DNA of 64,000 bases from Octopus sinensis. Taxonomy: Eukaryota. The stretch lies in assembly GCF_006345805.1 (NCBI RefSeq), contig NW_021835987.1, positions 1 to 64,000 of the forward strand, read 5' to 3'. This document shows positions 1-49,196 of the stretch, one piece after another. Both the position numbers and the translations under genes were made by a program. Positions within the stretch are counted from its first letter, which is position 1; every line of letters begins with the position of its first letter. The notes beneath the pieces were generated by a model, which ran no database searches, had not been told where the DNA came from, and saw nothing but the letters and a program-made list of their open reading frames with translations.

Positions 1-232
1 TTTCTTTACTACCCACAAGGGGCTAAACATAGAGGAGACATACAAGGACAGACAAACGGACTGAGTCCATTATATCGACCCCAGTGCGTAACTGGTACTT
101 ATTTAATCGACTCCGAAAGGATGAAAGGCAAAATCTACCTCGGCGGAATTTGAACTCAGAACGTAGCGGCAGACGAAATATGGCTACGCATTTCGCCCGC
201 CCTGTTAACGGTTCTGCCAGCTCGCCGCCAAC
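1..232 (-). mobile_element. SINE family 3 (also 44340-44530 +, with remnants near 1300 and 61340)
   Basis: Shared core tcgacyccgaaaggatgaaaggcaaa...cctcggcggaatttgaactcagaacg in opposite orientations at these sites. Confidence 0.75.
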
Positions 233-904
233 TTGTGTAAATATTGGTTTAGTGGAACAGAGTATTGGGAAACCGTGAATAAGGTGCAGGTTTCGAGTAT
301 TTGTCGGAAAATGTTTTCTTCTTGTCTTCTAATAGTAATAAGCCAAATTTCGAGGTTCTTCTCAGAGCTATCCCACATTCAAAAATTATACGGGTATTTA
401 AAAAATTTTCATTCTATAAATAATAAATTACGCATTATATTAATAGAATAAACTGTCGGTTTTCCAAATAGCAAATAAAAATTTAAAATAGTAAGTGAGA
501 GGCATTGCAAATGAGAATAGAATACTCTTCAGTCAATGCAAAGAATACTTAAATTTGTGATTAATTGGACGCAGGGAATGCAAAGAATATTTTAAATTGT
601 GATTAACTGGACGCAGTGAATGCAATGAATATTTAAATTTGCGAGAAATGAGAGTTGAAAAATACTTCAAGAAACTTGAGAAATGGAAGTTATAGGAAAT
701 TTCTTTAAAAATATTTCCAGACAATTAGTCCTTTAATAATTGCAGTTTTTTTTAGTACTTTAATTATCGTCACATGCCTAATTAATAAGAAGTTTTCTCC
801 ATTGTAGTATAGATAGTTCAGATAATCTTCATTTGCTGGCAGTTTTCGCACAATACAGAGACAAGTCCTCAAATATCTACACACACGCACACATACACAC
901 AACT

Positions 905-956
<52 letters not shown>

Positions 957-961
957 CATTC

Positions 962-1125
962 TTGTGTCCCTTAATTGAGAATTCAAGTCCGGTGGCTGAA
1001 GCCAGGTCGTTCCATGGTGAACTTTTCAAGTTTTTCCGAGAGAACCAGCTTTCAATGGTTGTATTTCGTCCATTAAATATCATAGTTACCACATCGGTTT
1101 GGTTTTTGCTAATCACTAGTTTCAC
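962..1125 (-). pseudogene. Copy D: isolated exon 3 paralog with a GT>GA donor
   Basis: ttgttttgcag acceptor; [54 protein letters not shown]. 164 nt to the homologous phase-2 boundary, which reads AA|gaatgt (B: GG|gtatgt). No exon 1 or 2 on the minus strand nearby. Confidence 0.7.
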
Positions 1126-2440
1126 CTGCAAAACAAATGAACATGTAGCACACATAGACACGTACACATGCATACATACACGCACACGTTAGCACTCTCA
1201 TAATGAAGAATAATCGGCTCAAGTTAAAGAGATCGAGATACTTTAAAATGTATTTCTTTAGTTGTTAGCCTAATTTCCACTCATTTTTATTACATCCTTT
1301 CGTCTTTTGGAGCTCGGTAAATTAAGTACCAGTTGTGTACTGAGGTCAATGTAATGAACTGGTACCCTCACAACATAAATTTCAAGCCTAGAAAAGTATA
1401 TTGTGATAATTACAGAATGTAGAAAGTAATGTAACACCAACGACTACTTAATCCAACCAAAATATCTCAGATACAAAAACGTAAACGGAATCACTATTTA
1501 ACCTTAAAATACATCGTACGTATTCAAAGAACCTTCTTGGTTTCGTGTTACGGAACGTTTTTCTGGTATTCTTTTATTCTTCTACTTGTTTCAGTCAATT
1601 GAGAGTGGCCATGCTAGAGCACCACCCTTTAGTCGAAGAAATTTACCCTTGGACTTATTCCCTGTAATCCTGGTGTTTATTCTATCAGTCTCTTCTGCTG
1701 AACATCCAAATAACAGAGACACAAACACACCAACATCGGTGTGAAGCAATGTTGGTGGTGGGACAAACACACACATAAACACACACACACACACGCACAC
1801 AGACACACACACATACATACATACAAACATACATACATACATACATACATACATGCATACATACATACATACATGCATGCATACATGCATACCTACATAC
1901 CTACATACATACATACATACATACATACATACAGACATACATACATACATGCATGCATACATGCATACATACATATATATGATGAGCTTGGTGGCAGTGG
2001 TGTGTCCGGCTGGGGGGATTTTGTGGTTTGCTGGTATGCCGAGAGATCCAGAGGGTCACACATGCATGCAAGCACATACACAAACACATACCTAGGGACA
2101 GAGACAGACAGACAGACAGACAGACTATCCTAAATTATAATTTACTTCAAATCCGTTTCTCTTTTTTTGCAAGCACCCTTCCTCTCACACGCAAACGTTC
2201 TCCATCTTGTCATTTCAGGATTTTCTCTCTTCCAGGATTTCTCCCTCTTACTCTCTAATATTTCCTCATCTTCAGTAATACCCTCTGACGCATTTTCCCC
2301 TTACATATAAAACTCCCTTCTGTCTCTCTCTCCTATCTCTCTCCTCTCTCTCTCTCTCTATTTCATGCCATTTCTTTCCCCCTTCTAACTCCTTCCGGTG
2401 AACAAGAATATCGCAGTTTTCCTTCATTCATCAAGAAGTG

Positions 2441-2741
2441 ATGGAAGTGACGCTGTTAACCCTTACAACAATCCTGGCTGTCACCTCAGGTCTGGGAATT
2501 AAGGAAGCTAACTACAAACGTTTGGAACCTGGTTATTCCTATGATTATATTGAGACACCTCCAACACAACAACAATTCCCCACCGCACGAAGTCGACTGG
2601 AATGTAACGCCATCGCTCTAAACAGCCAATCAGAATTCTTTACTTACAACAGCGTCAGCCGTGTTTGTAAGAATTACTCACCGAAAGATATAATGACAGT
2701 CGTCAGCACGAATGACAACAACGAGATTTCCTTCTATAGAT
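2441..2741 (+). CDS. Gene A exon 1: signal peptide plus degenerate PAN/Apple-like domain of a secreted protein (gene model join 2441-2741, 5324-5502, 8147-8301, 10340-10503, 10733-10782; 282 aa)
   Basis: ATG at 2441, MEVTLLTLTTILAVTSG hydrophobic leader, then LECNAIALNSQSEFFTYNSVSRVCKNYS (PAN-like C...FTYN...C pattern). Phase-1 donor T|gtaagt at 2742. Paralogous exons at 29296-28999 and 61749-61450. Confidence 0.85.
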
Positions 2742-2754
2742 GTAAGTGAAGCAT

Positions 2755-3096
2755 TCTTCTTTTCTTCTTCTTCTTCTTCTTCTTCTTCTTCTTCTTCTTT
2801 CTTCTTCTTCTTCTTCTTCTTTTCTTCTTCTTCTTTCTTCTTCTTCTTCTTTTCTTCTTCTTCTTCTTCTTCTTATTATTTTATTATTTTTATTATTATT
2901 ATTATTATTATTATATTATTATTATTATTATATTATTATTATTATTATTTTATTATTATTATTATTATTATTACCATTATCATTATGGCTGCTGTTGTTG
3001 TTGATGTTGTTGTTATTATTATTATTATTATCATTATTATCATTATTATCATCATCATTATTATCATTATTATTATTATTATTGTTGCTGTTGTTG

Positions 3097-3139
<43 letters not shown>

Positions 3140-3165
3140 CATTATTATTGTTGTCGTTGTTGTTG

Positions 3166-3217
<52 letters not shown>

Positions 3218-3220
3218 TAG
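2755..3220. repeat. Compound (TTC)n/(TTA)n/(TTG)n microsatellite at the start of gene A intron 1
   Basis: Direct inspection. Confidence 0.95.
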
Positions 3221-3865
3221 GGTACTCGTTAAGCGATGTGTGGCTTAATGATCTATTTTTCTCTTGTATACCCAAAAGTAAATGAACGTATCAATAACCA
3301 GTTTTACAAGTGTGTGTGTGCGTTTATGTGTGTGCGTGCATGTGTGTGTGTATGCGTGTATGCGTGTATGCATGTATGTAATCTTTCTGTCGAACAACGT
3401 AGACTCGAAACGTAAAAGACTTTTTTCTATTCCTGAGCGCTATACTAATATATTTGTTTGTTTCTACTCCACCTGCCTTCGTCTTTTGTTTATTTTCGTA
3501 AACTTTCCCTTTATGTATGTATTATACAATTTTATTAAATATTTTATACACAGAGGAAAAATCCATGACAAAAATCGAATAATCGATTATAAGTAATAAC
3601 CAGCCTCTCCTGTTGATGAAACCTGGATGCTTCTCTTCTCTGGCCAGCAATATCAATATTCGTAACGGACTTTTGATAGTTACAAAACTAAGAAAATGTA
3701 TGTTTAAGTAATGACTTCAAATTTATCAAAATAACGGCGTGGTACATTGACGGAGTTTTATCAGTTTGAAATACCACTATATATTCTGCTTCGTTTCCAT
3801 TAATATAGTATGGATTCTAATGAGCAAATCTTTATTAAAACATAGAGGTAATAATAAATTTAAAT

Positions 3866-3990
3866 GTTGGGTTGTCCGAAAAGTTCGTGCCGATTTTAAA
3901 GGAAAGAAAAAGGTCAATAAATACTTGACTTAACATTTTTAATCAACCAAATATGAACCATTTTGTTGCAGAATGCGTCTCCATCTTTCC
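3866..3990. mobile_element. Mariner-type terminal repeat remnant
   Basis: ttgggttgtccgaaaagttcgtgccg resembles mariner TIR ends. Followed by (CATA)n. Confidence 0.4.
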
Positions 3991-4689
3991 TTTCACTTGA
4001 AAATTCATACATACATACATACATACATACATACATACATACAAACATACATACACATACATACCCACACATACATACCCACACATACATATATATACAT
4101 ACATACATACATACATACATACATACATACATACATGCATACATACATGCATACATACATACATATATATACATACATACATACATGCATACATACATGC
4201 ATACATACATACATACACACATACATACATATATACATACACACACATACATACATACATACATACATACATACAAACATACATACACATACATACCCAC
4301 ACATACATATATACATACACACACATACATACATACATACACACATACATAAATACATACATACATACATACATACATACATACAACATACATACATACA
4401 TACATACATGCAAACAAAAATACCCTGTTGTTGATCTTGAAATTCCAATGAAGGAGCTTGGATGTAGGTTAGAAACTGATTATTTCTCTATGGGAAAGAA
4501 ATTTTGAAGTAAACTGAATAATGACATACATATGAGACTCTTTGTGTGTGTATGTATGTATGGCTGTGTGTGTGTGTGTGTGTGGTGTGTGTGTGTGTGT
4601 GTGTGTGAGAGCGAGCATGAATGCGTGTATGTCTACAGTGATAGATCCGAGTGTTTCATTTATTCACAATTTGATTTATTAATTTCACC

Positions 4690-5180
4690 GGACTATGAAT
4701 ACCTATAATGGTGCCTACGCAGTCGTCCACACCTATCACTGCCCTTATCAGTGGTTACAGGGAAATGATTGCGGAGTCCCTTTTTGCCTTATGCTTTTCC
4801 TTATCCTTTTTGTATTTCTTCCTTTGTTTTGCCGTTTTTTTCTCGGCTTTCAATACTCCCTCAGTCCTAACTGCCACTAGCAAGCTTTCCTCGCTTTAGC
4901 ATATCTGTCTCATCAAGTTCCCGAGTTCGATACCTACGCAGTCTTGCACACTTATCAGTGCCCTTCCTCCATTTGCCCTCTTCGTGTAGAGACGATCAGT
5001 GTCTGCACGTGGATGATGGCCTCCATGCATCATTAGACGCTTCCTTGTCTTCCTGTCCAACTCTTATCTCTCCTCCTCTGTTCAGTTAAGGATCCCAGCG
5101 CCATACCGAACTACTGCGGCTGCGCATAAGTTCATGGCCGAAATTATGTTCCAGGTATTCAGATTTGAAGCCAATACTAT
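4690..5180 (-). mobile_element. Degenerate R4/Dong-like LINE fragment in intron 1 of gene A
   Basis: Minus-strand VLASNLNTWNIISAMNLCAAAVVRYGAGILNW...HHPRADTDRLY.KR..GGR, matching the 57200-57420 part of the long element. Abuts an (ACT)n/(AAT)n tract. Confidence 0.72.
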
Positions 5181-5198
5181 TACTACTGCTGCTGCTAT

Positions 5199-5263
<65 letters not shown>

Positions 5264-5323
5264 ACAATAATAATAAAAATAACAATAATAATAATTATAA
5301 TAATACTATTATACTTATTTCAG

Positions 5324-5502
5324 ACAGACAATGGATTAAAACATATGCCCTAACAATGAGAGCTGGTTCGAAAATTTATAATTCATTCCTGAATATAGGA
5401 AGTCCTTCAACCTGGAAAGTGGACAAATGCAATGGTACCTTCTGTCCTAACTTCTTCCGACATCCCTTCCTTGATTTCTGGGAACATCTTCCAATTGATG
5501 AG
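5324..5502 (+). CDS. Gene A exon 2
   Basis: ttatttcag acceptor; (Y)RQWIKTYALTMRAGSKIYNSFLNIGSPSTWKVDKCNGTFCPNFFRHPFLDFWEHLPIDE; donor gtacgt. 179 nt, phase 1 to 0, same length as exon 2 of B and C. Confidence 0.88.
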
Positions 5503-5562
5503 GTACGTAGCCGTATGCATACACATACACTAATATATATATAATAATAGTAATAATCGTGA

Positions 5563-5820
5563 CGTATATTTGCCATTTAAATATGGCTAACCCCTAAGGG
5601 TGGATGCTACTGTAGTTTGTAGCCCCAGGAGGACACCTCCCAGAAACTCGAGTCCGTGTGTATCATAAGTTAAAGACGGGAAGGATGGCTTCACTTTGCA
5701 AATACTGATAGGGCACAGAAAATGTGTCTATAGCCAGCGGAAGGAGGTGTCCTCCTGGGACTACAAACTACAGTAGCATCCAACCTTAGGGGTTAGCCAT
5801 ATCTAAATGGCAAATATACG
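5563..5820. mobile_element. MITE or fold-back element with 78-bp terminal inverted repeats
   Basis: 5563-5640 is the reverse complement of 5743-5820 with 3 mismatches; about 100-bp spacer. Confidence 0.8.
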
Positions 5821-7326
5821 TTACGGTGTGTTGTAGCTACCGTTTATAACTCGCTCTAAGATTTATTATTAATAGTAATAATGATTAACAGATATTTAGA
5901 TCAATTCAATTGCTTGTTACATTTTTGACCTACAAAAATGATTTATGAGGAAGGCGAAACAATGTTGAATAGAATTCTATCCGCGGCAAACCGCAGTAAT
6001 AAGAAAAGATTATCACAGACAAAAGAATCTCCTTTTGGGGTTTGATGAGTAAATGGGAAACAAAATCGATGAAATCAGCTTACAATTCATGACTGGTAAA
6101 AGTTTTATTGAGCTCGGCAGAAAGTAAAGCACGTGGACCTCGGTGGTACTTGGATTCAAAGCTGAATTAGTTTGTCATTCTTCTTGTGAGATGGCAAGAT
6201 TGAGTAACAAACAAAACCTTGTGGGAACAGACGAACCAGGGACCTGTCAGAGCCCAGATCAAGAGCAGTCATGGATCATGGCTAGTTCAAAATTGAAATT
6301 TATTTCGTCACTGTATTTATTGCGGAGATGTGTCAATTCATGGAATGTTTTACTCTAGATATTTCGTGTTTTCATCCACAATGGAGACGAACACCCTCCT
6401 TCCAGGTAATCGGCTTGGAAAATTGTTGACATATTAAGACATTCGCCCTTAAATGAAACCAATAATAGCCTTAATACACAAATGAAGAAATTTTAATCAA
6501 CAATGCGGTTTTGAGCGAAATACATGACCTCAGCCCGAGGTTAGCTCATCATTTTTCGGTCATTTATATACATTCAAAAATTGTCGCTTTAAAATCGGAG
6601 GTTAAATATCATTATGATATATATTATATAGAGTTATTGTACAGTTATTATACTATGAGCCTTCCATAGTAGCTTTTTCTCCGTAACTCGCAAATCCTTT
6701 CGGGTTTACTCTTCTACTCTTTTGCATTGGTTGTCAAGAAATGCTAGGGGGACAAACACAGACACACAACCACAAACACACACACACACATATATATACA
6801 TATTTACGACGGGCTTCTTTCAGTTTCCGTCTACCAAATCCAGTCACAAGGCTTTGGTCGGCCCGAGGCTATAGTAGAAGACATTTGCCCAAGATGCCAC
6901 GCAGTGGGACTGAACCCGGAACCATGTGGTTGGTAAGCAAGCTACTTACCACACAGCCACTTCTGCGTTTGTTTATAAAAATATTATTTATGTCTGACTC
7001 ATACACTCTTTGCTTTCCAGACATTTCTACATTACTGCATATATTTTATACGCACTTTCTGACAAGTTGTGGTGCACCTGAGCACTGTATACATTAATTT
7101 CATTATTATTATTATAGCAAGATACGGATTAGGTGATAGGCCAATCAAAATCATTAATTTCGCCTGTTATGCAAATTCGTTTCGATCAAAAGAATGATGA
7201 GAGTGAACATTAGTCTAACAGCTTTGTTTGTTATTCGAACTTGGCATCTCACAAGAAGAATAACAAAATAATTCAACTTTGAGTCCAAGTGGCACCAAGG
7301 TCCACATGCTTTACTGTTTACTCTGC

Positions 7327-7443
7327 GTGTGTGTCAGTGTGTCTCAGTGTGTGCGTGTGTGTGTGTGTGCGTTTGTGTGTGTGTGTTTGTGTGTGTGTGT
7401 GCGTTTGTGTGTGTGTATGTGCGTTTGTGTGTGTGTGTCTCAG

Positions 7444-7474
<31 letters not shown>

Positions 7475-7655
7475 TTGTGTGTGTGTGTGCGTTTGTGTGT
7501 GTGCGTGTGTGTGTGCGTGTGTGTGTGTTTGTGTGTGTGTGTTTGTGTGTGTGTGTTTGTGTTTCTGTGTGTGTGTGCGTGTGTGTGTGTTTGTGTGTGT
7601 GTGCCAGTGTGTTTGTGTGTTTGTGTGTGTGTGTTTGTGTGTGTGTGCGTTTGTG

Positions 7656-7724
<69 letters not shown>

Positions 7725-8050
7725 GTTTGTGTGTGTGTGGTGTGTGTGTTTGTGTATTTGCGTGTGTGTGTGTGTTGTGTGTGTGTGTGTGTTGTGGTGT
7801 GTGTGTTTGTGTGTGTGTGTCAGTGTTTGTGTGTGTGTTTGTTTGTGTGTGTGTGCGTTTGTGTGTGTGTGTGTCAGTGTGTGTGTGTGTTTGTGTGTGT
7901 GTGTGTTTGTGTGTGTGTGGTTGTGTGTGTGTGTTTGCGCGTGTGTGTGTGTGCGCGCGTGTGTGTGTGCGTGTGTGTGTGTTTGTGTATTTGTGTGTGT
8001 GTGTTTGTGTATTTGCGTGTGTGTGTTTGTGTATATTTGTGTGAGTTTGT

Positions 8051-8083
<33 letters not shown>

Positions 8084-8125
8084 GTGTATGTGTGTGTGTG
8101 TACCCGTGTGTGTATATGTGTGTGC
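7327..8125. repeat. (TG)n-rich microsatellite upstream of exon 3 of gene A
   Basis: Direct inspection. Confidence 0.95.
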
Positions 8126-8146
8126 TACATGCTCATTTTTTTGCAG

Positions 8147-8301
8147 GTAAAAGTGGTAATCTATAAAAACGAAATCGCTTCGGTAACTATGATATTTGAT
8201 GGACGAAATACAACCCTTAAAACCTGGTTCTCTCAGAAAAATTTGAAAAGTTCACCATGGGACGACCTAGCTTCCGCCACCAATCTGTATTTCTCAATGA
8301 C
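8147..8301 (+). CDS. Gene A exon 3 (using the derived donor at 8302; the ancestral-position donor is at 8311)
   Basis: tttttgcag acceptor; [51 protein letters not shown](T); AC|gtgagt donor; 155 nt, phase 0 to 2. Homologous to 26117-25951, 49196-49033 and 1125-962. Confidence 0.8.
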
Positions 8302-9327
8302 GTGAGTATAGTATATCTATATATCTTTTATGCTTGTTTCTTTTTCTTCGTTACGTAGAGACTTATCATGGTACAAAACATATAACTTTCGTAGGCAACA
8401 GATATAAAGTTTAACCTATACATTTAGACGCTAAACTTTCTGGAGACGAACAACATATGCCCAGGCTTTCAACAGTATATCTTCATTTGTTATGATATAC
8501 AGAATGCTAATTTGAACTAATACTGCTGCCGTCTGTAAAGATGAAATATATCCAGGCATTCGGCTAACTACAGCACCGCTGATTTGCTAAAAGCAACAGA
8601 AATAGATTTAGCTATTCCACCGCCGCTGCTGTGGAGGCACATGGCCTAGTGGTTAGAGCAGCGGACTCGCGGTCGAGGGGTCGCGGGTTCGAATCTCAGA
8701 CCGGGCGATATGTGTGTTTATGAGCGAAACACCTAAGCTCTACGCAGCTTCGACAGAAGGTAATGGCGAAACTTCTGCTGATTCTTTCGCCACAACTTCC
8801 TCTCACTCTTTCCTTCTACATCTTACAGCTCACCTGCGACGGATAGGCGTCCCGTCCAGGTGGGGAACCTGTACGCCAAGAAACCGGGAAACCGGCCCTT
8901 ATGAGCCAGGTATGGCTCGAGAAGGAACAACCAACCGCTGCTGCAAGAGGCTATAACTCTATTAATGGTACATTTCTGTATTTTCAACACTACACGACCA
9001 AATGAAATGCTTTCTCGTTACGAACAGCAGAGTTACCAGAATTTCACATTAAGTAGCATATTTTAAAGTGGGAAGCACGAAAATGTATTTTCACCTTAAA
9101 ATGTACACTCTTTTATTCTTTTACTTGTTTCAGTTATTTGACAGCGGCCATGCTGAAGCACTGCCTTTCAGTCGAGCAAATCGACCCCAGGACTTATTCT
9201 TTGTAAGCCTAGTACTTATTCTATCGGTCTCTTTTGCCGAACCGCTATGTTACGGGAAAGTAAACACAGCAGCATCGGTTGTCAAGCGATGTTGGGGGAC
9301 AAATACAGACACAAACACACACACACA

Positions 9328-9420
<93 letters not shown>

Positions 9421-9537
9421 CAGTTAATCTAAACATGAAAACACAAAAATATACAACAACGCGACATATATATACTTGGGCAAGTGTCTTCTACTATAGC
9501 CTCGGGAATAGTAGACGGAAACTGAAAGAAGCCCGTC

Positions 9538-9607
<70 letters not shown>

Positions 9608-9710
9608 GTTGTGTGTGTGTTTCTGTATGTTTGTCTGTGTTTCTCCCCCCAACATCGCTTGACAAATGATGCTGGTGTGTTTACGTCCCCGTAACTTAGC
9701 GGTTCTGCAA

Positions 9711-10283
9711 AAGAGACCGATAGAATAAGTACTAGGCTTACAAAGAATAAGTTCTGGGGTCGATTTGCTCGACTGAAAGGCGGTGCTCCAGCATGGCCGC
9801 AGTCAAATGACTGAAACAAGTAAAAGAGACCGATTGAATAAGTACTAGGCTTACAAAAATAAGTCCTGGGGGTCGATTTGCTCGACTGAAAAGCGGTGCT
9901 CCAGCATGGCCGCAGTGAAAATGACTGAAACAAGTAAAAGAGACCGATAGAATAAGTACTAGGCTTACAAAGAATAAGTCCTGGGGTCGATTTGCTCGAC
10001 TGAAAAGCGGTGCTCCAGCATGGCCGCAGTCAAAATGACTGAAACAAGTAAAAGGGTCCGATAGAATAAGTACTGGGCTTACAAAGAATAAGTCCTGGTG
10101 TCGATTTGCTCGACTGAAAAGCGGTGCTCCAGCATGGCCGCAGTCAAAATGACTGAAACAAGTAAAAGGGTCCGATAGAATAAGTACTGGGCTTACAAAG
10201 AATAAGTCCTGGTGTCGATTTGCTCGACTGAAAAGCGGTGCTCCAGCATGGCCACAGTCAAAATGACTGAAACAAGTAAAAGA
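9711..10283 (+). repeat. Five tandem ~114-bp copies of a SINE 3' segment
   Basis: Units start at 9711, 9824, 9938, 10052 and 10166 (aagagaccgatagaataagtact...gactgaaacaagtaa). Confidence 0.9.
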
Positions 10284-10339
10284 GTAAATGTTTAGGTTTC
10301 CATATTCTGAAACCCATCCAACTTTTATTAACTCCACAG

Positions 10340-10503
10340 GAAAGATCGTCTCTTCCATATATCGAAAAAAATAAATAGATGTTTCAAGATGACTGGCTGG
10401 TTGGTTACTGATGACAATCCGCCGGCGTGTTCGTTCGGTTACACACGTCGTTCTCCGTCAATCCGTTATTCTCATAAAAACAAGAAAATCTTATGGGACA
10501 ATG
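10340..10503 (+). CDS. Gene A exon 4
   Basis: ttttattaactccacag acceptor; KDRLFHISKKINRCFKMTGWLVTDDNPPACSFGYTRRSPSIRYSHKNKKILWDN; G|gtgagt donor; 164 nt, phase 2 to 1. Shares F.IS...C...GWL...C......P.I.Y....W.. with exon 4 of B and C. Confidence 0.8.
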
Positions 10504-10732
10504 GTGAGTGATATTTTTATTTTGTGTGTGTGTGTGCGTGTTTATGTGTGTGAGCATTGATTCAACTGATTTATTATTAAAAGCGGTCCGACCATGACCC
10601 TCCTGTATGTTTCCCACTCAACGATGTAAAGATTTGGCTGCTATTTCTAGTAATTCGAGTGAACGCGTATGAAGACCTTCCACGATTTATTTCCATTCCT
10701 TTGGTTATTGATGTTGTTATTGTTACTTCCAG

Positions 10733-10782
10733 GTTATACATTAGCAGACTCCATGGCCGTATTCATCCGCCTGAGGCAGTAG
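10733..10782 (+). CDS. Gene A exon 5 (terminal coding exon)
   Basis: ttacttccag acceptor; (G)YTLADSMAVFIRLRQ then TAG. Near-identical to the terminal exons of B and C. The five exons sum to 849 nt, a multiple of 3. Confidence 0.85.
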
Positions 10783-10813
10783 AATTTATCCAGCACATGA
10801 TACTATAGTTGTT

Positions 10814-11377
10814 GTTGTTAACGTCCATCCAATCCTGCTGACCACCACTAGTGATCCCAGTAGGTCAAGTATTACCTGTTAATAAAGAATCCATATAAAT
10901 ATTCAAAGTTGTTAACGTCCATCCAATCCTGCTGACCACCACTAGTGATCCCAGTAGGTCAAGTATTACCTGTTAATAAAGAATGCATATAAATATTCTA
11001 AGTTGTTCACGTCCATCCAATCCTGCTGACCACCACTAGTGATCCCAGTAGGTCAAGTATTACCTGTTAATAAAGAATGCATATAAATATTCTAAGTTGT
11101 TCACGTCCATCCAATCCTGCTGACCACCACTAGTGATCCCAGTAGGTCAAGTATTACCTGTTAATAAAGAATCCATATAAATATTCAAAGTTGTTAACGT
11201 CCATCCAATCCTGCTGACCACCACTAGTGATCCCAGTAGGTCAAGTATTACCTGTTAATAAAGAATGCATATAAATATTCTAAGTTGTTCACGTCCATCC
11301 AATCCTGCTGACCACCACTAGTGATCCCAGTAGGAAAAGTATTACCTGTTAATAAAGAATCCATATAAATATTCGAA
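10814..11377 (+). repeat. Six tandem 94-bp units in the 3' UTR of gene A, each with AATAAA
   Basis: Units start at 10814, 10908, 11002, 11096, 11190 and 11284. The unit is homologous to the 3' UTR of B (about 24800-24700) and C. Confidence 0.92.
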
Positions 11378-12303
11378 GTCCGTCTTTCGAGTTGTGATTG
11401 GCTTTCTCTGACCCCACAGACAGAGCTGTTGTTGTTGTTGTTGTTGTTTATGTTCTAGTTCATACTAAATGCGTTGCACCTTAGGTAAGTGTCTTCTACC
11501 AAAGCCTTGTGAGTGGATTTAGTAGGCGGGAACCGAAAGAAACATGTCGTGTGTGTGTGAGTGTGTCACTTACTGTATGTATGTGTGTGTGTGTGTTTTT
11601 ATGCGTGTGCCTGCCACCCTCCCCACCAACATCGCTTGATAAACGATGCTGGTATGTTTACGTCCCCGTAACTTTGTGGGTCGGCAAAAGAGACCGATAG
11701 AATAAGTACTAGGCTTACAAAGAATAAGGCCTGAAGTTGATTTGTTCTACTAAAGGCGGTGCTCCAGCAGCGCCGCTGTCAAATAACTGAAATAAATACA
11801 AGAAAAGAATAATAAACGGCTAGTATTCTGATTTCGAATTTAAACCTTAAGTTCGTGATGAGGTCGATCTTATAGCAGTTTATATATATTGTTAAAATCT
11901 ATTATCCTTTATGGAAAATAACGTAAACCTCTGTAGAGACAACTGGAATTTCAGAAGTATAAGTGATTAATATCAAAGAAGAACCAACGGTATCCCCTAG
12001 TATATATACATATATAGAACTTCCAATATCGTTAGTCGATATAGAGCAAAACTGGTGTACACTTGGATAAAATTTATCCCTAGGAAAAAACAACCTCTTT
12101 CCGTACAAACTTATATATATGTGTGTGTGTGTGTGTGGAGGCGCAATGGACCATTTGTTAGGGCAGCGGACTCGCGATTGTAGGATCGCGGTTTCGATTC
12201 CCAGACCGGGCTTTGTGAGGGTTTATTGAGCGAAGACACCTAAGGCTCCACGAGGCTCTGACAGTGGCTGGTGGCGATCTCTGCTGTACTCTTTCGCCAT
12301 AAC

Positions 12304-13190
12304 TGCCTGTCCGCCACGGAAGATATCTTTAAGGCCGCAGCCCCCTATTACAACGAGGCCCTGGCCCGCAGTGGCTTTAAAGATAAGATTACCTATACTA
12401 GTATAGCCCCACGCCAACCCAGGAAAAATAGACGAAGACACATTAGCTGGTACAACCCCCCTTCAACCGTGAGGTCGCTACACCTGTAGCTAAAATCTTC
12501 TTCACTCTCCTACAGAAACACTTCCCCACCCAACATAAGTACTACACTATCCTAAATAAGAACACTATTAGACTCTCCTACTCTACCACGCCCAATCTAG
12601 CCAGGAACCTAGCCAACAACAATGTGAAAAAAACTTAACATATCTACTTTTTCCGAGGCCCATCCAACGTCCGATAGCAATTGCAACTGCCCTGATAAAA
12701 CCACCTGCCCCCTCAACAACAACTGCCTACAGAGGGACCTAGTATATACATGCGAGGTAAGATCAGGCCTGACGATAAAAGAAAATCCTACATCGGAATG
12801 ACGTCAAACAGCTTTAAGACCCGTTGGTACGCACACACACACTCGTTCCGGCGACCGGATAAATCCAACCAAACTACCCTCGCCGCCCACATCTGGTACC
12901 TTAAAAGGAACTCCATCCCCTTCAAGACCAAGTGGAAACTACTACAGAAGGCGCGTTCGTACACAGGAGGCCATACCTGCTGTGACCTTTGCATTTCGGA
13001 GAGCCTAGAGATCTTGTTCGCCAAAGGCCCTCTCCTAACAAGATTTCAGAACACTCCCCAAATTGCATGCATAAGAATTATGCAAACTACAAGAACTATA
13101 GACCTACCCGGCAACCAGATTGATGACACCCCACCCACAAACCCCCCCAATCCCACCGTTCCCTAGCTACCCCGACTACCTTTCTCCTAA
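12304..13190 (+). mobile_element. Penelope-like element fragment (RT C-terminus plus GIY-YIG), Naiad-like
   Basis: APYYNEALARSGF..WYNPP..HFP..LNKNTIRLSYS, then CNC..CPL..CL..VY, YIGMTSNSFKTRWYAH, C.LC. Frameshifted and fused to a truncated SINE. Confidence 0.8.
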
Positions 13191-16000: not shown

Positions 16001-16041
<41 letters not shown>

Positions 16042-18123
16042 GCAAAGTACAAACGATAGAGTTGTGTTCAATATACTAATTGATTATATGTATAAATATA
16101 TTAATTTTATTTATTAATAAACTGGGGACAATTATAATAATGATCATAAGAATGATAATAATGAATAAATAGTTTTTTTAATTACTAAATGAATCTAATA
16201 ACCAAAATAATAATTATTATAGTATTGGATAGTATATAACTTGTATTCTTTTTACAATAATGTTATTTCGCTACTTCTGAAAGAATTAATAAAACTTGGA
16301 TATATATAATTCATAGTCCTTTAATATATTTCGATAGCTGTAGATTATACTTATCTAATTATTTTGTCCGTTATAATTATTTTATTGTTTTTTAATTGTA
16401 ATTGATATGTAGTTGAATAGTTAACGCTCACGCTCATAATACATAGGCATTGGAATTAATTTTTGCAATCCAACCATATTTTCACACGGAATTTCGTCAA
16501 TCTTTAAACCACTGCCTCCGATGAGCCTTATATAAGGAAAATCAATTGTTTATATATCAAAAGATGTATATAAACCGAAACAAATTGGCTTTTTTGGTTT
16601 TTTTAATAATTGTTACATAATAATCATAGTATATTGTTATAATATAAATAAATTAATGGATTGAAAATTGTATCTCTGTATTTAATTTATTATTTATATA
16701 TGTTTTTTTTTGTATCCGTGAATGTGTTACCTCCATTGGGGATGACGTGTTACTAAACAACTGCAACAGAAACAAAGTGGATGATGTAACCATAAATACA
16801 TTATGACTTAACAAAAGATGAGATGGTCACATTTGGAATACTATAGATCATAGCTCTATTGGATCAGAGTTGATCTGTTGATTAAACATTGTCTCAAAAC
16901 CTTTCTCACTTCACAATTCGCGATTACAGACACACTCACCTCCTAATCATAATACATACGGTCGCAAATAAAGCAGAATGCGATAAAAAAAAGAAAACAC
17001 TTACTTTAACTGAGGTGGAGGGCCGCCCCTACACTTTAGGTGGTTATGTGAGGACTTCTTGTCAGGACTGTTCATTAAGGGCACAACTTCTTTCTGCTCT
17101 CCTTCCTTTCTTCTATTGTAAGTACTTTCTTCTATTAACCACAGTAGAATGTACAGATATCAGGACTTTTCCTAAATGCCAGCACTGTCCAATGCTGTCT
17201 GTCCTATGTTCTCTTATCAGTATCACCTTCAGACTTAGACTTGTCAGAAAATTACCAAAACACGCAAATTGACCAAAAAACACAGAACCATCCACTCAGA
17301 TCAATCTTCTTTACTAATATGCCTATATTTCCACAAAAAATTGAAAATACACCAAACTTTTCAATACGTCTTCTTTGTTACTACGAAGAAAAGAAGTTCT
17401 TGAGTAGAGAAATGCGCTTCACGAAACATACAGAAGATACGCCTGTGTAGTTGTTGAAGTCGTTCCGATGTTAGCAGTAATGCAGCTCTGGTGTTTTTGA
17501 TACCGACGTTGCAGTGTTAATACCTGGTGATTGCGTGATGTGATGTTGGTGTTTCTGTAGGTGGAGATATGAAAGCTGAACGTTGAATGTCGCTGGACCG
17601 AAGTCTTCCATTAAAGAAAATCATTGAAATCAATCACCATGGATGATGAAAAGTAAACATATTTCTGAATCAGCGCACTCATTATTTCAACCATAACACA
17701 GACTGCTTTCATGACTGTGTGTGTGCGTGCTCGAATGTGTGAGTGTATGCGTGTGCGTGCGCGCGCGCTTATGTGTATCCCCTAATCAGGGCGAACGAAT
17801 TTTTCAATATTTCCATAGCAAGATATTAATATATTTCGTGACTGACCGCAGATTTGCTTTCAGGGTGCCGAGAGAAACATGAGAAGTGCTCGAGAGCCTC
17901 GGATCCAAAATGGACCAAACAGGAAAAACTCCAACGAGTTTACATCGGAGCTTCTTGAGGTTCATTCATCCTTGCTTATGAAAGACTGAATGCTTTCTGA
18001 ATCGAGTGTTGTGTCTGCTTGGAGCTGTGGAACTGTGGTGATTCCTGCTGGAGTCTCGAAGGTGACCCTGGAAAGTCCTCATCAGCCCATAGAAACGGTT
18101 CAGCTAACTGAATGTCGCTAATG

Positions 18124-19299
18124 TTAGTTAGTTAGTTAATTTGGCTCAAAAGTAAATAGCAAGGCCATGTAGGGGGACATGGAGTTAAGTACAGGGTGGT
18201 GTTCATGTAAAGAGTTCAGGCCACTTGAGGTCCAGGGAGGCTTTGAACAAAGCGGTCGTCGGCATCTTTACCGTCTCGTCTGGCAGCTTGTTCCACGGAT
18301 CCGCAACCCGGACGGAGAAAGTTCCTCTCCTTCGATTGAGATGAAATCGTCGCAGGTAGAGCTTTTCGGAATGACCCCGCAGCCGACGCTCTTGAGCAGG
18401 AGTGAAGAACAGCTCTTTCGAGAGGTTACACTTTCCGCTTATGATGTTGTGGGCGAGAATGAAATCACCACGGCGGCGGCGTTTTTCAAGAGAATAAAGG
18501 TCGAGCGTCCTCAGCCTTTCTTCGTAGGACAAATTTTTGAGACCATGAACCATGCGGGTAGCCAGCTTCTGGACTCTTTCGAGATGCTGTATGTCTTTGA
18601 GGAGATAAGGAGAAGAGGCTTGAATCCCATACTCCAATATGGGTCTCACCAGCGTGACATAGAGTGGTAGGAATATGGCTGCTGTGAGCATTCCGAATGA
18701 CCGTCGAATCAAGAACAGAATTCCGCGTGCTCTGTTGGCAGCATGGACGCACTGGGCCGAAGACGAAAAGGAGGAATCCACCAAGATACCCAGGTCCTTT
18801 ACCTGATCGGTCCTCTCCAGCAGCAGACGACCCGGCTCGAAATCAAGTTGAGTTGCAGGAGTAGAGCCGACTGGCAGATGACAGCACTTTGACACGTTCA
18901 GACACAGGTCCCAATCGTTAGACCACTTCCAAATTTGGTGGAGGCATCGACGAAGATCCTCTATATGACCGCGAGGAGCGACCAGTTTGATATCGTCGGC
19001 AAATAGAAGGGTGTGTTGTGTGAGGTCGTCGGGCAAGTCATTTATGAAGACTAAGAACAACAAGGGCCCAAGCACTGAACCTTGAGGCACGCCACTGCTC
19101 GCACTGGAGACGTCGGACCGCGAACCATTAACTTAGACTTGGAAGAAGCGATCTGAGATGAAGGCACCAACCCATCGTACAATATCCGGATGGAAACTAT
19201 ATGCTTGAAGCTTGACAAGTAATAGGCGGTGGTTTACCGAGTCAAAAGCTTTGGCAAAGTCCAATAAAACGATGTCAACAGCATCACTATCATCGAGGA
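18124..19299 (-). mobile_element. 5'-truncated CR1/L2-type LINE inserted into a Tc1/mariner remnant
   Basis: DFAKAFDSVNH, PQGSVLGPLLFLVFINDLP, LFADD, open 295-aa ORF 18203-19090, (TAAC)n tail. The empty site is visible in the paralog at about 39920. Confidence 0.9.
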
Positions 19300-20360
19300 T
19301 TGCTGGGAATTCGTTTCAACATCCGAGGTCACAAAAACGAGAGGAGACCATCTAGTAGCTGTCACAACAGTCCAAACCTCAAGTGACAGTGGATTTGGAC
19401 GTCGATTTACGAGTCTAATCATGACAGAGCCAGATACCCTCGAACGTTGATCCTTCTGGTAGTTTACTGTCAGTTCGATGCCAAGTATCTTTTCATCTGC
19501 AAGCGTGCCTTCAGCAATCTGACACATGATAAGACGATTTCTCTCCAGTTTGGGGGGCCTTGTATACTTGCGTGATCTCCAGATGTCGGATTATCTCCTA
19601 GGTGTAGGTCATGGAACAATTTTTTTTTAATATGTGGGCCCCTTCTTTTTCCTTCTTCGTAGTCACTTGTACTACGCTAGCCTCAATAGATAATTGCTGC
19701 CACATATATAATTAATGCTCCATTAATATATAACTACTGGCATATATAAACTTAATACTATATTTTTATGTTAGTTTTCAATCTATTTATCTCTCAATAA
19801 ATGCAATCATGTATTGAACGTATGACAACACTGATTCTCCTGATTGTTGAACTTAATCGAAAGTTATCGATCTAAACAATGAATTATTTTCTGTCGCCCA
19901 ACCATGAATTTCTTAACCTGAAAGCCAGTCATGTTAACGAGAATCAACATAAGATTTAATTCAACCAACCGCATCTGTCGATTTTCTGAACTGAACATTT
20001 ACTCCAACATTTTCAGTTCTCATTATTGGTTTCATACTTTACTCGCGTACCGACATACTATTAAATACAGTTCACTATTAAAAATTGTACAACGTATATT
20101 CTAGCTTTTAAGCGATGAGTTTCTTAAAACTGAGCAACATGTCTACAAAATCCATATCCGCTCGTGGCTTCATTTTAATCTTGTCATTTTCCAAATGATT
20201 TTCTGTTATATTTAATGTTTTCCATTACTCACAAGAGTTGTGTTTCCTAGGCCAACGAAAAGACAACAAAATTCAGTATAGAAACAAATCTATATTACAA
20301 CAGATACATATATGCATACATTCGTACAAATATACTCATACATACAAGTATATATATATG

Positions 20361-20416
<56 letters not shown>

Positions 20417-20431
20417 CATATATATGCATAG

Positions 20432-20533
<102 letters not shown>

Positions 20534-20899
20534 CCACACACAGATATATCATATATATGTATATATATATCAGGGAAAACTGATGAAGGGCACTATTTGT
20601 TTTCTGTTTTTTCGCTGTTCGAAAACAGTTCGTTTTCCATGTCTTCGTGTGTCATTGTTTTTAACGAGTTTTTTATGTCCTGTACCCATATATGCATGTA
20701 TATATACATATATATGTGGGTATGTACATGTATGTATATATATGGATATATTTATAAATTATTTATATTTTATACATATATATATGTATATGTGTGTATA
20801 TATATATATACGTATATATATATACACATATGTGTATGTTTGTGCGTATATATAAGTATGTGCGTATGTTTGTATATGTGTATACACACACACATACAC

Positions 20900-22574: not shown

Positions 22575-23480
22575 TATATATATAGCAGTTTCGTTCTTAT
22601 ACATTACTGGTTGTTTAATTTGGTCAATCTCTACTTCAGTTAGAAATTGTTTTCAGAATGTTTCCTCTGGTGTTGGCAAGTTTGTTACTGTCTATGTAGG
22701 GTCTTACTTCAAGGTGTTTCCATCTCCAGTTTCAGTACGTTTGTACAGTATTAGATTTATTTGTGGGGAAATATATGGCATGGGACTTCTTTATTTTTTT
22801 CCCTAGACCATTTTTCATTTGGTTTTTTGATGACGATCATGGATGGCCATCTGTTGGAATATTCCGATTGCGGGGTACTTCCAGCGCCTGTGGGTCGGGA
22901 AGATTTGAACCAGTAGCTTAAAACCGTATCGGGACAGCTGCTATAAAGAGGAAACTACAACACATAGGAATTCAGGATTTCATCTCCTTCGAAGTATTTC
23001 TCTTCTGAAGCAACACAATTTATGAAGCATCGTTTCAGTCGTCAGGAACATCCCTGGAACTCATTTCTGAGGATAGCGAGCATCTACCTCGTCGCATTCT
23101 CTAGGATTTTCTCGACATCTTCAAATCTTTTGGGCCTTCCACTACGAAGACCTTGGTTCTATGGTCATAGCAACAGGTACAAGATTTTCACCTATAATGA
23201 CGTTTTTCAAAAAGTCTTCGACTTCCAAGTCACAATCAAAAAGAGATTCTGCACCGCTGACAGCCTTTCTTCTTCTTGGGACAACCACACTCAAGACACT
23301 TTACTTCTAAACACTGCTATCAACAACGGAAGTGAATGGAAACTTTATAACCACCGTGAATGATCGCCATATTTCATTCTGTAACTGCCACATCTGAAGT
23401 GTGCAGTGTTACATAATAGATCGGACTCTTACCTAACATTCCATTGAACCCTTACTGACAAAACGATGGGTTAGATCGGC
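22575..23480 (-). mobile_element. Shorter paralogous copy of the same R4-like 5' fragment (B duplication unit)
   Basis: Highly similar to about 45960-46850. Confidence 0.72.
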
Positions 23481-23657
23481 TGTAATGTATGTATACAACT
23501 GTGCATATTATATATATAATACATATATTATATGTATGGATATATGAATATAAATATATATATATACACATACATATATGCATATATATACATACATACA
23601 TTCATACATACATATATGCATATATATACATACATGCATACATATATGCATATATAT

Positions 23658-23716
<59 letters not shown>

Positions 23717-23747
23717 TATATACATATATCTATAAACATATATTTAC

Positions 23748-23796
<49 letters not shown>

Positions 23797-23811
23797 TATG
23801 TTAATATATAT

Positions 23812-23893
<82 letters not shown>

Positions 23894-23899
<6 letters not shown>

Positions 23900-24141
23900 A
23901 TAGTTATCGCCATACTAATATGGCATTCTTATAAAAATAAGAATAAAGCTGTCCGCTTATTAGCTCCATGAGGCCATCGCCTTAAGTTAGCTATTTGATA
24001 CACAAACTGTATCCATATATGGATACAGTTTGTGTATCAAATAGCTAACTTAAGGCGATGGCCTCATGGAGCTAATAATCGGACAGCTTTATTCTTATTT
24101 TTATAAGAATGCCATATTAGTATGGCGATAACTATTATTTT
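23894..24141. repeat. 248-bp spacerless palindrome
   Basis: 124-bp arms centred on 24017/24018 with 1 mismatch. The same peptide ([25 protein letters not shown]) appears in ORFs on both strands. Confidence 0.92.
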
Positions 24142-24198
24142 CCGGGAACGCTGCCGTTGTTCTCTTTTAGAGAGACTTAGTAATTTTAATATTTCTAT

Positions 24199-24256
<58 letters not shown>

Positions 24257-24570: not shown

Positions 24571-24609
<39 letters not shown>

Positions 24610-24839
24610 TATATATATATATGTGGTCAAATAGGAAATGGAACAATAACAACAACAGCTGGAAAGAGAGAAAGAGAATCAAAAACTTCAAAGACCGATG
24701 TTGGATATATTATTTATATGGATTCTTTATTAACCGGTAATACTTGACGTGTGTGCATCACTAGTGGTGGTCAGCTAGATTGGGTGAATGTGAACAACAA
24801 CAACAATTGTGTCAATGGATTTCATGTGCTGGGCTATTT

Positions 24840-25950: not shown

Positions 25951-26117
25951 CCATATCCTCCTGAAAGTCTGAAAATATCTGGCTTGGCTGAAGATAGGTC
26001 AATCCATGGAGAACTTTTCAAGTTCTCATAAATGAACCAGTTAGATAATTTTGAATTTTGTCCATCAAAAATCATAGTCACCACAGCAGTTTGGTTTTTA
26101 TAAATCACTAGTTTCAC
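25951..26117 (-). CDS. Gene B exon 3
   Basis: ttttcag acceptor; VKLVIYKNQTAVVTMIFDGQNSKLSNWFIYENLKSSPWIDLSSAKPDIFRLSGGY; GG|gtatgt donor; 167 nt, phase 2. Confidence 0.87.
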
Positions 26118-49032: not shown

Positions 49033-49196
49033 TAAATTCCTGAAAGTCCGAAACCCTTTGGGATGGTTGGATTTAGGTCATTCCATGGGGAACTTTTCAA
49101 GCGTGTATCATAGAACCAGTAATAAAAATCCGTATTTCTTCCATCAAAAATTAAAGTCACCACAGCAGTTTGGTTTTTATAAATAACCAGTTTCAC
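49033..49196 (-). CDS. Gene C exon 3 (intact)
   Basis: ttttcag acceptor; VKLVIYKNQTAVVTLIFDGRNTDFYYWFYDTRLKSSPWNDLNPTIPKGFGLSGI; TA|gtacgt donor; 164 nt. Confidence 0.8.

What the first reader, a model, noticed from the sequence alone, without database searches (positions are those of the whole stretch)
8291..8316. One G>T change appears to create both a stop codon and the new splice donor that removes it (gene A exon 3)
Seen: aligned to C (TTC GGA CTT TCA GGA ATT TA|gtacgt) and D (TTC TCA ATT AAG GGA CAC AA|gaatgt), gene A reads TTC TCA ATG ACG TGA GTA TA|gtatat. The ancestral-position donor at 8311 gives a 164-nt exon, the same as C and D, but the conserved Gly codon GGA is TGA at 8303-8305. 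The same T creates a consensus donor AC|GTGAGT 9 nt upstream in the same phase 2, which excises the stop at a cost of 3 residues. Inference: either a self-rescuing nonsense mutation, or a switch between a productive isoform and an NMD-targeted one.
Basis: partly seen in the sequence, partly recalled or inferred. Interest (0 to 1): 0.7.

Follow-up and report, generated by a model that had tools for sequence, protein, structure and literature searches.

The report
Stop codon spliced out by itself
In an octopus gene, one G-to-T change made a stop codon and, with the same T, a strong new splice site that would cut that stop out; the change is real and older than two octopus species, but whether the repaired gene still matters to the animal is open.

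Summary
The window is the first 64 kb of Octopus sinensis contig VCDQ01006028.1. Gene A belongs to an octopus-expanded family of about 296 aa, with a PAN/apple-like N-domain and an unknown C-domain.

TGA lies at 8303-8305, GTGAGT at 8302-8307, and the ancestral-position donor GTATAT at 8311. Five of six relatives carry GGA at that codon. An O. bimaculoides relative reads GGGAGT, one G>T away from GTGAGT.

The long form has a second stop (TA|G across the junction). The old donor has also lost its +5 G.

This is not an assembly error. The O. vulgaris ortholog has the same 24 bases, and a paralogue there carries the same block. Both O. vulgaris annotated proteins end exon 3 at the new donor. The ortholog model continues in frame through exon 4 (…FSMT|NNRLFHIS…).

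The new donor scores 7.2 bits against -0.8 for the old. The three lost residues lie in an indel-tolerant loop.

Against a working gene: RefSeq stops the O. sinensis protein at the TGA, no RNA was available, and the coding sequence diverges between the two species as fast as non-coding DNA (12 replacements, 2 silent).

Verdict: a fixed 9-nt donor shift (intronization) that restores the frame. Its functional status is unresolved, and an NMD switch is unlikely.

The parts
2408..2410 (+). Position of the family's ancestral start codon, ATA in gene A
   Evidence: Paralogue V1 has ATG here. A reads AAGAATATCGCAG. The O. vulgaris ortholog is identical.
2441..2741 (+). Exon 1 coding part from the in-frame ATG (MEVTLLTLTTILAVTS...: signal peptide plus PAN/apple-like domain); donor T|GTAAGT, phase 1
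   Evidence: O. vulgaris proteins P0057, P0048 and P0040 start at the same MEV. The RefSeq CDS starts later, at 2693.
5324..5502 (+). Exon 2
8147..8301 (+). Exon 3, short form (155 nt), ending ...TCA ATG AC
   Evidence: It matches the exon 3 end used in O. vulgaris model P0057 (...FSMT|N).
8302..8307 (+). New 5' splice site GTGAGT. Its T (8303) is the derived base.
   Evidence: Scores 7.2 bits, U1 duplex -7.7 kcal/mol.
8303..8305 (+). In-frame TGA replacing the ancestral GGA (Gly)
   Evidence: RefSeq protein XP_036356015.1 ends here.
8302..8310 (+). The 9 nt (GTGAGTATA) turned from exon into intron. The last two bases, TA, plus G10340 would make a second stop, TAG.
8311..8316 (+). Ancestral-position donor, now GTATAT (the +5 G is lost)
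   Evidence: Relatives have GTATGT or GTACGT. Scores -0.8 bits, U1 duplex -2.8 kcal/mol.
10340..10503 (+). Exon 4, open in the frame set by either donor. It keeps all family-invariant residues (R, F, C, GW, C, P, YS, W).
   Evidence: It differs at 4 of 164 nt from O. vulgaris exon 4; the exon-plus-flank alignment is 97.4% identical.
10733..10782 (+). Exon 5 coding part, ending in TAG at 10780-10782 (...FIRLRQ*), two codons earlier than in other family members
   Evidence: The same TAG is in V1, V2 and V3.
962..1125 (-).
49033..49196 (-).
25951..26117 (-). Exon 3 of paralogue G2 (167 nt), intact GGA and donor GTATGT

Best explanation
Gene A is O. sinensis LOC118761917. It belongs to an octopus-specific secreted-protein family with a PAN/apple-like N-domain.

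In an ancestor of O. sinensis and O. vulgaris, the Gly codon GGA near the end of exon 3 mutated to TGA. The preceding base was G and the next codon was GTx. The same T therefore turned G-GGA-GT into GTGAGT, a consensus 5' splice site 9 nt upstream of the old one and in the same phase.

U1 now pairs far better with the new site, so intron 3 starts at 8302 instead of 8311. The stop and two neighbouring codons are removed with the intron. Exon 3 (155 nt) joins exon 4 at 10340 in frame. The result is a 282-aa protein that lacks three residues of a variable loop.

The 9 intronized bases and the old donor then drifted. A second stop (TA|G) arose, and the old donor lost its +5 G.

Shown here: the sequence states, their polarity, their presence in two species and in a paralogue, the open frame, the relative donor strengths, and the loop location.

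Inferred: that the new donor is the one used in vivo, and that the protein is made. Whether the gene is still under selection is unresolved.
For: (1) TGA, GTGAGT and GTATAT are at the stated coordinates. The short form is open and the long form has two stops.

(2) GGA is ancestral, seen in D, G2, G3, L003 and V2. L003 reads GAG GGA GTT TT|GTATGT, one G>T from the A state.

(3) The O. vulgaris positional ortholog (L006, colinear with window 948-12304) has exactly TCAATGACGTGAGTATAGTATATC. The two species diverged about 2.5 My ago (PMC10700109).

(4) The annotated O. vulgaris protein CAI9742327.1 (P0057) reads ...NLYFSMT|NNRLFHISKKINRC.... That is the new donor joined to exon 4 in frame.

(5) The O. 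vulgaris paralogue V1 (P0022 gene) carries the same block, with an even better donor (AG|GTGAGT, 11.9 bits). Its annotated exon 3 ends there. Its own exons 4-5 are open in that frame despite about 23% DNA divergence from A.

(6) Donor scores are 7.2 bits and -7.7 kcal/mol for the new site, against -0.8 bits and -2.8 kcal/mol for the old. A's other donors score 7.7-10.1 bits.

(7) The three lost residues align to P0001 223-225. They lie in a loop between two strands with the lowest pLDDT of the domain. That region has 1- to 15-residue indels across the family.

(8) The apparent extra lesions, ATG>ATA at the old start and the early TAG, are shared subfamily features. Annotated full-length relatives use them, so they are not signs of decay specific to A.
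Against: No transcript or junction data could be examined.

The RefSeq model for O. sinensis (XP_036356015.1, 128 aa) ends at the TGA, and its CDS range is 2693-8305.

Both O. vulgaris models that use the new donor are otherwise odd. P0057 jumps from exon 4 to the next gene's exon 3. P0022 joins to a TAG acceptor 2.7 kb away. That annotation mixed transcripts with ab initio predictions, so the models are not proof of usage.

Between A and its ortholog the CDS differs at 17 of 846 nt (2.0%), with 12 replacements and only 2 silent changes. Non-coding DNA differs at 2.4%. The intact paralogue pair L002/L004 shows 6 of 891 (0.7%) against about 1.3-2% non-coding. There is therefore no sign of purifying selection over 2.5 My.

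dN/dS for exons 4-5 is 0.5-1.4 for every pair in the clade, so it has no discriminating power.
Confidence: 0.6

Rival explanations
1. Decaying or dead copy. The G>T was simply a nonsense mutation in one member of a large, rapidly turning-over tandem family. The gene is a pseudogene, or at best encodes the truncated product that RefSeq predicts. The GT is a by-product of G+TGA+GT. Exons 4-5 are still open only because too little time has passed.
For: The RefSeq protein stops at the TGA. Non-synonymous divergence from the ortholog (15 nt in about 650 sites, 2.3%) equals the non-coding rate (2.4%). That is about 4 times the non-synonymous rate of the intact paralogue pair. Neighbours are visibly broken or truncated in annotation: D has a GA donor and no exons 1-2, and LOC118761915, LOC118761916 and LOC118761913 are truncated or read-through models. 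With only about 2% divergence, an open frame would survive by chance.
Against: A frame-preserving consensus donor exactly at the stop is rare by chance. The spliceosome would be expected to use it whatever the gene's fate. The same block sits in a second gene (V1) whose divergent exons 4-5 are also intact and keep every family-invariant residue. There are no frameshifts or further stops in 846 nt in either species. A ratio of 12 replacements to 2 silent changes is also what diversifying selection gives, and intact family pairs show omega near 1 in these exons.
Confidence: 0.28
2. Regulated switch. Both donors are used. The 8302 donor gives the productive mRNA. The 8311 donor gives a stop-containing mRNA that nonsense-mediated decay removes, tuning expression.
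For: Two GT sites lie 9 nt apart in the same phase. The PTC in the long form lies about 170 nt upstream of the exon 4/5 junction.
Against: The old donor is the weakest in the family (-0.8 bits, no -1 G, no +5 G). It lies downstream of a strong site. The long form has acquired a second stop and the old donor has lost its +5 G. That looks like drift of abandoned sequence, not maintenance of a poison segment. No annotation in either species uses the 8311-type junction in the genes that carry the block.
Confidence: 0.06
3. Assembly or sequencing error, or a private mutation of the sequenced animal. The true base at 8303 is G.
For: None found. It was a formal possibility for a single unplaced contig.
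Against: An independent long-read assembly of a different species (O. vulgaris, GCA_951406725.2) has the identical 24-nt sequence at the colinear locus. It has the same block in a second gene.
Confidence: 0.01

Closest known systems
Intronization of a stop-containing 3n exonic segment by activation or creation of a 5' splice site (Catania & Lynch 2008, PMC2586383; related: Farlow et al. 2010, PMC2809761)
   Same: A premature stop arises in an exon. A 5' splice site upstream of it removes a multiple-of-three segment containing the stop. The frame is kept and the change can become fixed. [quoted passage not shown]
   Different: Here the stop and the splice site are made by the same nucleotide, so no latent site or second mutation is needed. 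The intron is extended by 9 nt (a donor shift) rather than born anew. Usage in RNA is not yet shown.
Intron sliding and novel splice sites between close species (e.g. PMC2891723 for Drosophila; PMC3538075 for human-specific sites)
   Same: The exon-intron boundary moves by a few bases between paralogues or orthologs through point mutation, changing a few residues.
   Different: Those cases are generally not coupled to a nonsense codon at the same base.
Disease-type exonic mutations that create or activate a cryptic donor and cause an in-frame partial exon deletion (e.g. CFTR c.523A>G, loss of the last 57 nt of exon 5; PMC7605713)
   Same: A single exonic substitution redirects splicing to an upstream donor inside the exon, giving an in-frame shortened protein.
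   Different: Those are deleterious alleles in patients and the substitution is missense. Here the allele is fixed in two species, and the segment removed carries the nonsense codon the mutation itself made.
Unitary or young pseudogene in a tandem gene family
   Same: In-frame stop relative to the ancestral gene model, neutral-looking substitution pattern, and broken neighbours.
   Different: A complete open frame exists through a consensus splice site, and there are no frameshifts or other stops.

Membership tests
Donor shift / intronization of a PTC-containing segment | The GT of the new donor is a derived state created by substitution in formerly coding sequence | tested here: met
   Five of six relatives have GGA. 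L003 has GGGAGT where A has GTGAGT.
Donor shift / intronization of a PTC-containing segment | The removed segment is a multiple of 3 and contains the stop, so the frame is preserved | tested here: met
   The segment is 9 nt (8302-8310). The short form translates without a stop to 282 aa.
Donor shift / intronization of a PTC-containing segment | The new site is competent and the old site is abandoned | tested here: met
   7.2 against -0.8 bits, and -7.7 against -2.8 kcal/mol. The old site lost its +5 G. The scoring matrix and the U1 sequence were taken from general knowledge, not from an octopus training set.
Donor shift / intronization of a PTC-containing segment | The new junction is the one present in mature mRNA | not testable with these tools
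   There is only indirect evidence. O. vulgaris gene models P0057 and P0022 end exon 3 at the new donor. The RefSeq O. sinensis model does not continue past the TGA.
Pseudogene | No intact reading frame under any plausible splicing | tested here: not met
   The frame is open from 2441 to 10782 through the new donor in O. sinensis, and the same holds in O. vulgaris.
Pseudogene | Neutral evolution (dN/dS about 1; coding rate equal to non-coding rate) | tested here: inconclusive
   17 of 846 coding against 127 of 5300 non-coding differences; 12 replacements to 2 silent. This is compatible with neutrality. Intact family members also show omega 0.9-1.0 in exons 4-5, and the numbers are small.
Pseudogene | Not expressed | not testable with these tools
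   No RNA data were available. No paper mentions the locus.
Alternative-splicing-coupled NMD switch (poison segment) | Two competing splice sites of comparable strength | tested here: not met
   The two donors differ by 8 bits.
Alternative-splicing-coupled NMD switch (poison segment) | The poison segment is conserved above background | tested here: inconclusive
   The 9 nt are identical in the ortholog, but so is 99.2% of the surrounding 260 nt.
PAN/apple-domain secreted proteins | N-terminal PAN/apple fold | tested here: inconclusive
   Foldseek of the AF2 model of P0001 hits HGF NK1 (3mkp_A, prob 0.96, 84 columns, rmsd 3.4) and PAN-bearing copper oxidases, with E>0.001. UniRef names one member 'Apple domain-containing'. 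Pfam gives no hit.

The most novel reading that the evidence does not exclude
The stop-plus-donor block is a self-contained, self-rescuing cassette. One base change made a nonsense codon harmless at the moment it arose. The block (TGA GTA TA|GTATAT) was then copied by gene conversion into at least one other family member (V1). It has been kept with intact downstream exons in two genes and two species. That would make it a natural, datable worked example of the Catania-Lynch 'stop codons as a life line to intronization' idea, in a family whose exons evolve faster than its introns.
Probability: 0.3. Interest if true: 0.55.

Novelty: new member of a known kind. Interest (0 to 1): 0.38.

Why it matters
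If the junction is confirmed in RNA, this is a clean natural case with several useful properties:
- A single nucleotide creates both a nonsense codon and the splice site that deletes it.
- It is fixed for at least 2.5 My.
- The ancestral state is still visible in paralogues.
- The abandoned donor is caught decaying.

It illustrates how exon-intron boundaries slide and why G-TGA/G-TAA nonsense mutations need not be null. It also warns that annotation pipelines can call such genes truncated: RefSeq does so here, while the sister-species annotation does not.

It has no wider consequence unless the gene family, which is uncharacterised and fast-evolving, turns out to be important.

Tried and rejected
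- dN/dS (Nei-Gojobori) on exons 4-5 for A, V1, V2, V3, L002 and L003. Omega was 0.5-1.4 for all pairs, including intact genes, so it cannot separate a live gene from a dead one.
- Comparison of coding and non-coding divergence between orthologs. The difference was not significant (Fisher p=0.29), although the intact control pair is slower.
- A protein search with the exon-4 peptide to find any annotated or assembled protein containing it. It found nothing, because only cluster representatives are indexed. The ortholog was then found as a cluster member of P0003.
- An early blast against /data/L004.fa mixed two loci in one file. The hits were re-assigned.
- Pfam gave no family. Foldseek against PDB gave no significant match for the C-terminal domain; fibrinogen-like hits had prob 0.3-0.6 and TM about 0.3 and were rejected.
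- A literature search for the locus or its accessions found no papers.
- The tRNA-like repeat in intron 3 is not a tRNA gene according to ARAGORN.
- A tblastx self-comparison was swamped by microsatellite translations and was abandoned.

Full report
WHAT THE LOCUS IS

The window is bases 1-64000 of Octopus sinensis contig VCDQ01006028.1 (assembly GCA_006345805.1). The RefSeq protein XP_036356015.1 (LOC118761917, P0003) maps to window 2693-8305.

Gene A lies on the + strand. Its parts are:
- Exon 1: coding from the ATG at 2441 to 2741.
- Exon 2: 5324-5502.
- Exon 3: 8147-8301 or 8147-8310.
- Exon 4: 10340-10503.
- Exon 5: 10733-10782, ending in TAG.

The gene belongs to a family of roughly 296-aa proteins. 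I found the family only in octopods: O. sinensis, O. vulgaris, O. bimaculoides and Argonauta. There is no Pfam match.

I made an AlphaFold model of the close paralogue P0001 (mean pLDDT 72). Its N-terminal part resembles PAN/apple domains (HGF NK1, Foldseek prob 0.96). The C-terminal beta-rich domain has no significant structural match.

The window holds three more copies on the minus strand:
- G2, with exon 3 at 25951-26117.

THE OBSERVATION

Exon 3 ends ...TTC TCA ATG ACG TGA GTA TA|GTATAT. The TGA is in frame at 8303-8305, GTGAGT is at 8302-8307, and the old-position donor is at 8311.

With the old donor the exon is 164 nt, as in C and D. With the new donor it is 155 nt in the same phase 2. 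Joining 8301 to 10340 gives an uninterrupted frame...NLYFSMT-KDRLFHISKK....

- The long form has a second stop. Its last two bases, TA, plus the first base of exon 4, G, make TAG.
- The old donor is GTATAT, where relatives have GTATGT or GTACGT. It has lost the +5 G.

POLARITY OF THE CHANGE

I aligned six exon-3 copies and later added O. vulgaris copies.
- The codon under the stop is GGA in D, G2, G3, the O. bimaculoides relative LOC106882933 (L003) and the O. vulgaris paralogue V2.
- It is ATA in the closest O. sinensis paralogue, L002.

TGA is therefore derived from GGA.

L003 reads GAG GGA GTT TT|GTATGT. The hexamer at the place of the new donor is GGGAGT, exactly one G>T from GTGAGT. V2 reads AAA GGA GTA AA|GTATGT. 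From that state a silent A>G in the preceding codon would also be needed.

The last four codons of the exon are hypervariable in the family (EITK, EGVF, KGHK, SGIY and others). 'One change did both' is therefore plausible but depends on which ancestor is assumed.

The coincidence is partly structural. G+TGA always gives GTGA, and the next codon was already GTx. GTGAGT itself is rare, with 46 copies on both strands of the window.

NOT AN ERROR, AND OLD

P0003's 90%-identity cluster contains a 283-aa O. vulgaris protein, CAI9742327.1 (P0057). Its locus, L006, is colinear with window 948-12304. Its exon 3 with flanks is 99.2% identical to A.

It includes the identical string TCAATGACGTGAGTATAGTATATC. 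The T, the new donor, the TA and the decayed old donor therefore all predate the split of the two species, put at about 2.5 My (PMC10700109).

A different O. vulgaris gene, V1 (protein P0022, locus L005), carries the same block. It reads ATG AGG TGA GTA TA|GTATAT, with a G at -1 that makes the donor even better.

In exons 4-5, V1 is closest to V2 (dS 0.13) and far from A (dS about 0.28-0.31). Yet V1 shares the end of exon 3 and the start of intron 3 with A. The three genes are mosaics, so gene conversion most likely moved the block between genes. That step is an inference.

IS THE NEW DONOR USED?

Direct RNA evidence was not available. The indirect evidence points both ways.

For usage:
- P0057 reads ...NLYFSMT|NNRLFHISKKINRCFKMTGWL.... 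That is exon 3 ending at the new donor, joined in frame to exon 4.
- P0022 ends ...KYLM|SSY, which also requires ATGAG|GTGAGT.
- A position-weight score gives 7.2 bits for the new donor against -0.8 for the old. The U1 duplex energies are -7.7 against -2.8 kcal/mol. A's other donors score 7.7-10.1 bits, and the old-position donors of relatives score 1.6-6.0. The matrix and the U1 sequence come from general knowledge of metazoan splicing, not from octopus data.
- V1's own exons 4-5 are about 23% different from A's at the DNA level. They are also open in the frame set by the new donor and keep every family-invariant residue.

Against usage:
- RefSeq ends the O. sinensis protein at the TGA.
- Both O. 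vulgaris models are otherwise odd. P0057 skips exon 5 and runs into the next gene's exon 3. P0022 joins to an unusual acceptor 2.7 kb downstream.
- That annotation combined transcripts, protein alignments and ab initio predictions, so the models are hints, not proof.

COST OF THE RESCUE

The three residues removed correspond to P0001 223-225. In the model they sit in a loop between strands 217-220 and 231-234, in the block with the lowest confidence in the C-domain. In the family alignment this stretch has indels of 1 to 15 residues. A three-residue loss there is likely to be tolerated. That is an inference.

IS THE GENE STILL UNDER SELECTION?

This remains open.

Two apparent extra lesions are not specific to A.
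- The ancestral start codon is ATA at 2408-2410.
- The stop is two codons early, with the original TAA changed to TTA.

The ATA start is shared with the O. vulgaris ortholog. The early TAG is shared by the ortholog, V1 and V2. Several annotated O. vulgaris proteins begin at the same MEV... start.

Between A and its ortholog, however, the 846-nt coding sequence has 17 differences. Twelve are amino-acid replacements and 2 are silent. That is 2.0%, against 2.4% (127 of 5300) in cleanly aligned non-coding DNA.

The intact paralogue pair L002/L004 differs at 6 of 891 coding sites (4 replacements, 2 silent), against about 1.3-2% in non-coding DNA.

A therefore evolves about as fast as neutral sequence, both upstream and downstream of the stop. 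That fits a decaying gene. It also fits the diversifying pattern of this family: omega is 0.9-1.0 in exons 4-5 between genes annotated as intact, and several exons differ more than their flanking introns. The numbers are too small to decide.

CONCLUSION

The best-supported reading is a fixed 9-nt donor shift. One G>T made a stop and the splice site that removes it. The frame is preserved at the cost of three loop residues, and the abandoned bases have since drifted. My confidence that the new donor is the working one is about 0.6.

The main rival is that the copy is simply dying and the open frame is a relic (about 0.28). A regulated productive/NMD switch is unlikely given the very weak old donor and the second stop (about 0.06). 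Assembly error is excluded.

Conceptually this is an instance of stop-driven intronization through a 5' splice site, as proposed by Catania and Lynch (PMC2586383). It is also related to intron sliding and to disease mutations that create exonic donors (PMC2891723, PMC7605713). It is a neat new example of a known kind, not a new mechanism.

Noticed in passing
No exon 1 or 2 of it lies between it and gene A, and it runs toward the contig start. The colinear O. vulgaris region carries a 92-aa gene call (L006 158-2608). It is probably a gene fragment or pseudogene.
   Followed up: partly
window 8147-8301 and 10340-10503 versus L002, L004 and L005: Exons of this family often differ more than their flanking introns. 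A and V1 exon 3 are about 85% identical, while about 45-50 nt of intron on each side are about 99% identical. A and L002 exon 4 are 74% identical, while neighbouring intron blocks are 85-94%. Similarity is mosaic between A, V1 and V2. This suggests diversifying selection, frequent short gene conversion, or both.
   Followed up: partly
window 2408-2410 and 10780-10788: In gene A the family's usual start codon is ATA, and the next in-frame ATG (2441, MEVTLL...) is used. The stop is TAG two codons before the usual one, whose TAA has become TTA. The ATA start is identical in the O. vulgaris ortholog. The early TAG is shared by the ortholog, V1 and V2. A subfamily therefore has shifted ends.
   Followed up: yes
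window 9709-10285 and 10814-11379: Two tandem arrays: about 5 copies of a 114-nt unit in intron 3, and 6 copies of a 94-nt unit starting about 30 nt after the stop codon (96-98% identical copies). Related units occur at the same places in paralogues and in O. vulgaris.
   Followed up: no
window 22590-27843 vs 45947-52508; 16026-20558 vs 36158-42084: Large segmental duplications (about 88-90% identity, introns included) carry paralogues G2 and G3 and neighbouring sequence.
   Followed up: no
window 25951-26117 (G2); L004 and L005 (O. vulgaris); L003 (O. bimaculoides): Many annotated proteins of the family are chimeric or truncated. P0033 reads through the exon-3 donor of G2. P0025, P0038 and P0021 join exon 3 directly to exon 5 in the wrong frame. 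P0049, P0050 and P0054 fuse several genes. Annotation of this cluster is unreliable in all three species.
   Followed up: partly
window 8630-8810, 12134-12311, 63549-63728: A repeated element of about 180 nt with a tRNA-like start (ggcctagtggttagagc...gggttcgaatc) sits in intron 3 and elsewhere. ARAGORN calls no tRNA in the first two copies; the third (63549-63728) lay outside the range scanned (1-13000). It is probably a tRNA-derived SINE.
   Followed up: partly
window 61451-61773 (-) and 55338-55451 (+): A further exon-1-like piece of the family has an in-frame stop (…VVHHE*PNEISFYR). A nearby segment matches the middle of the chimeric O. vulgaris protein P0054.
   Followed up: no
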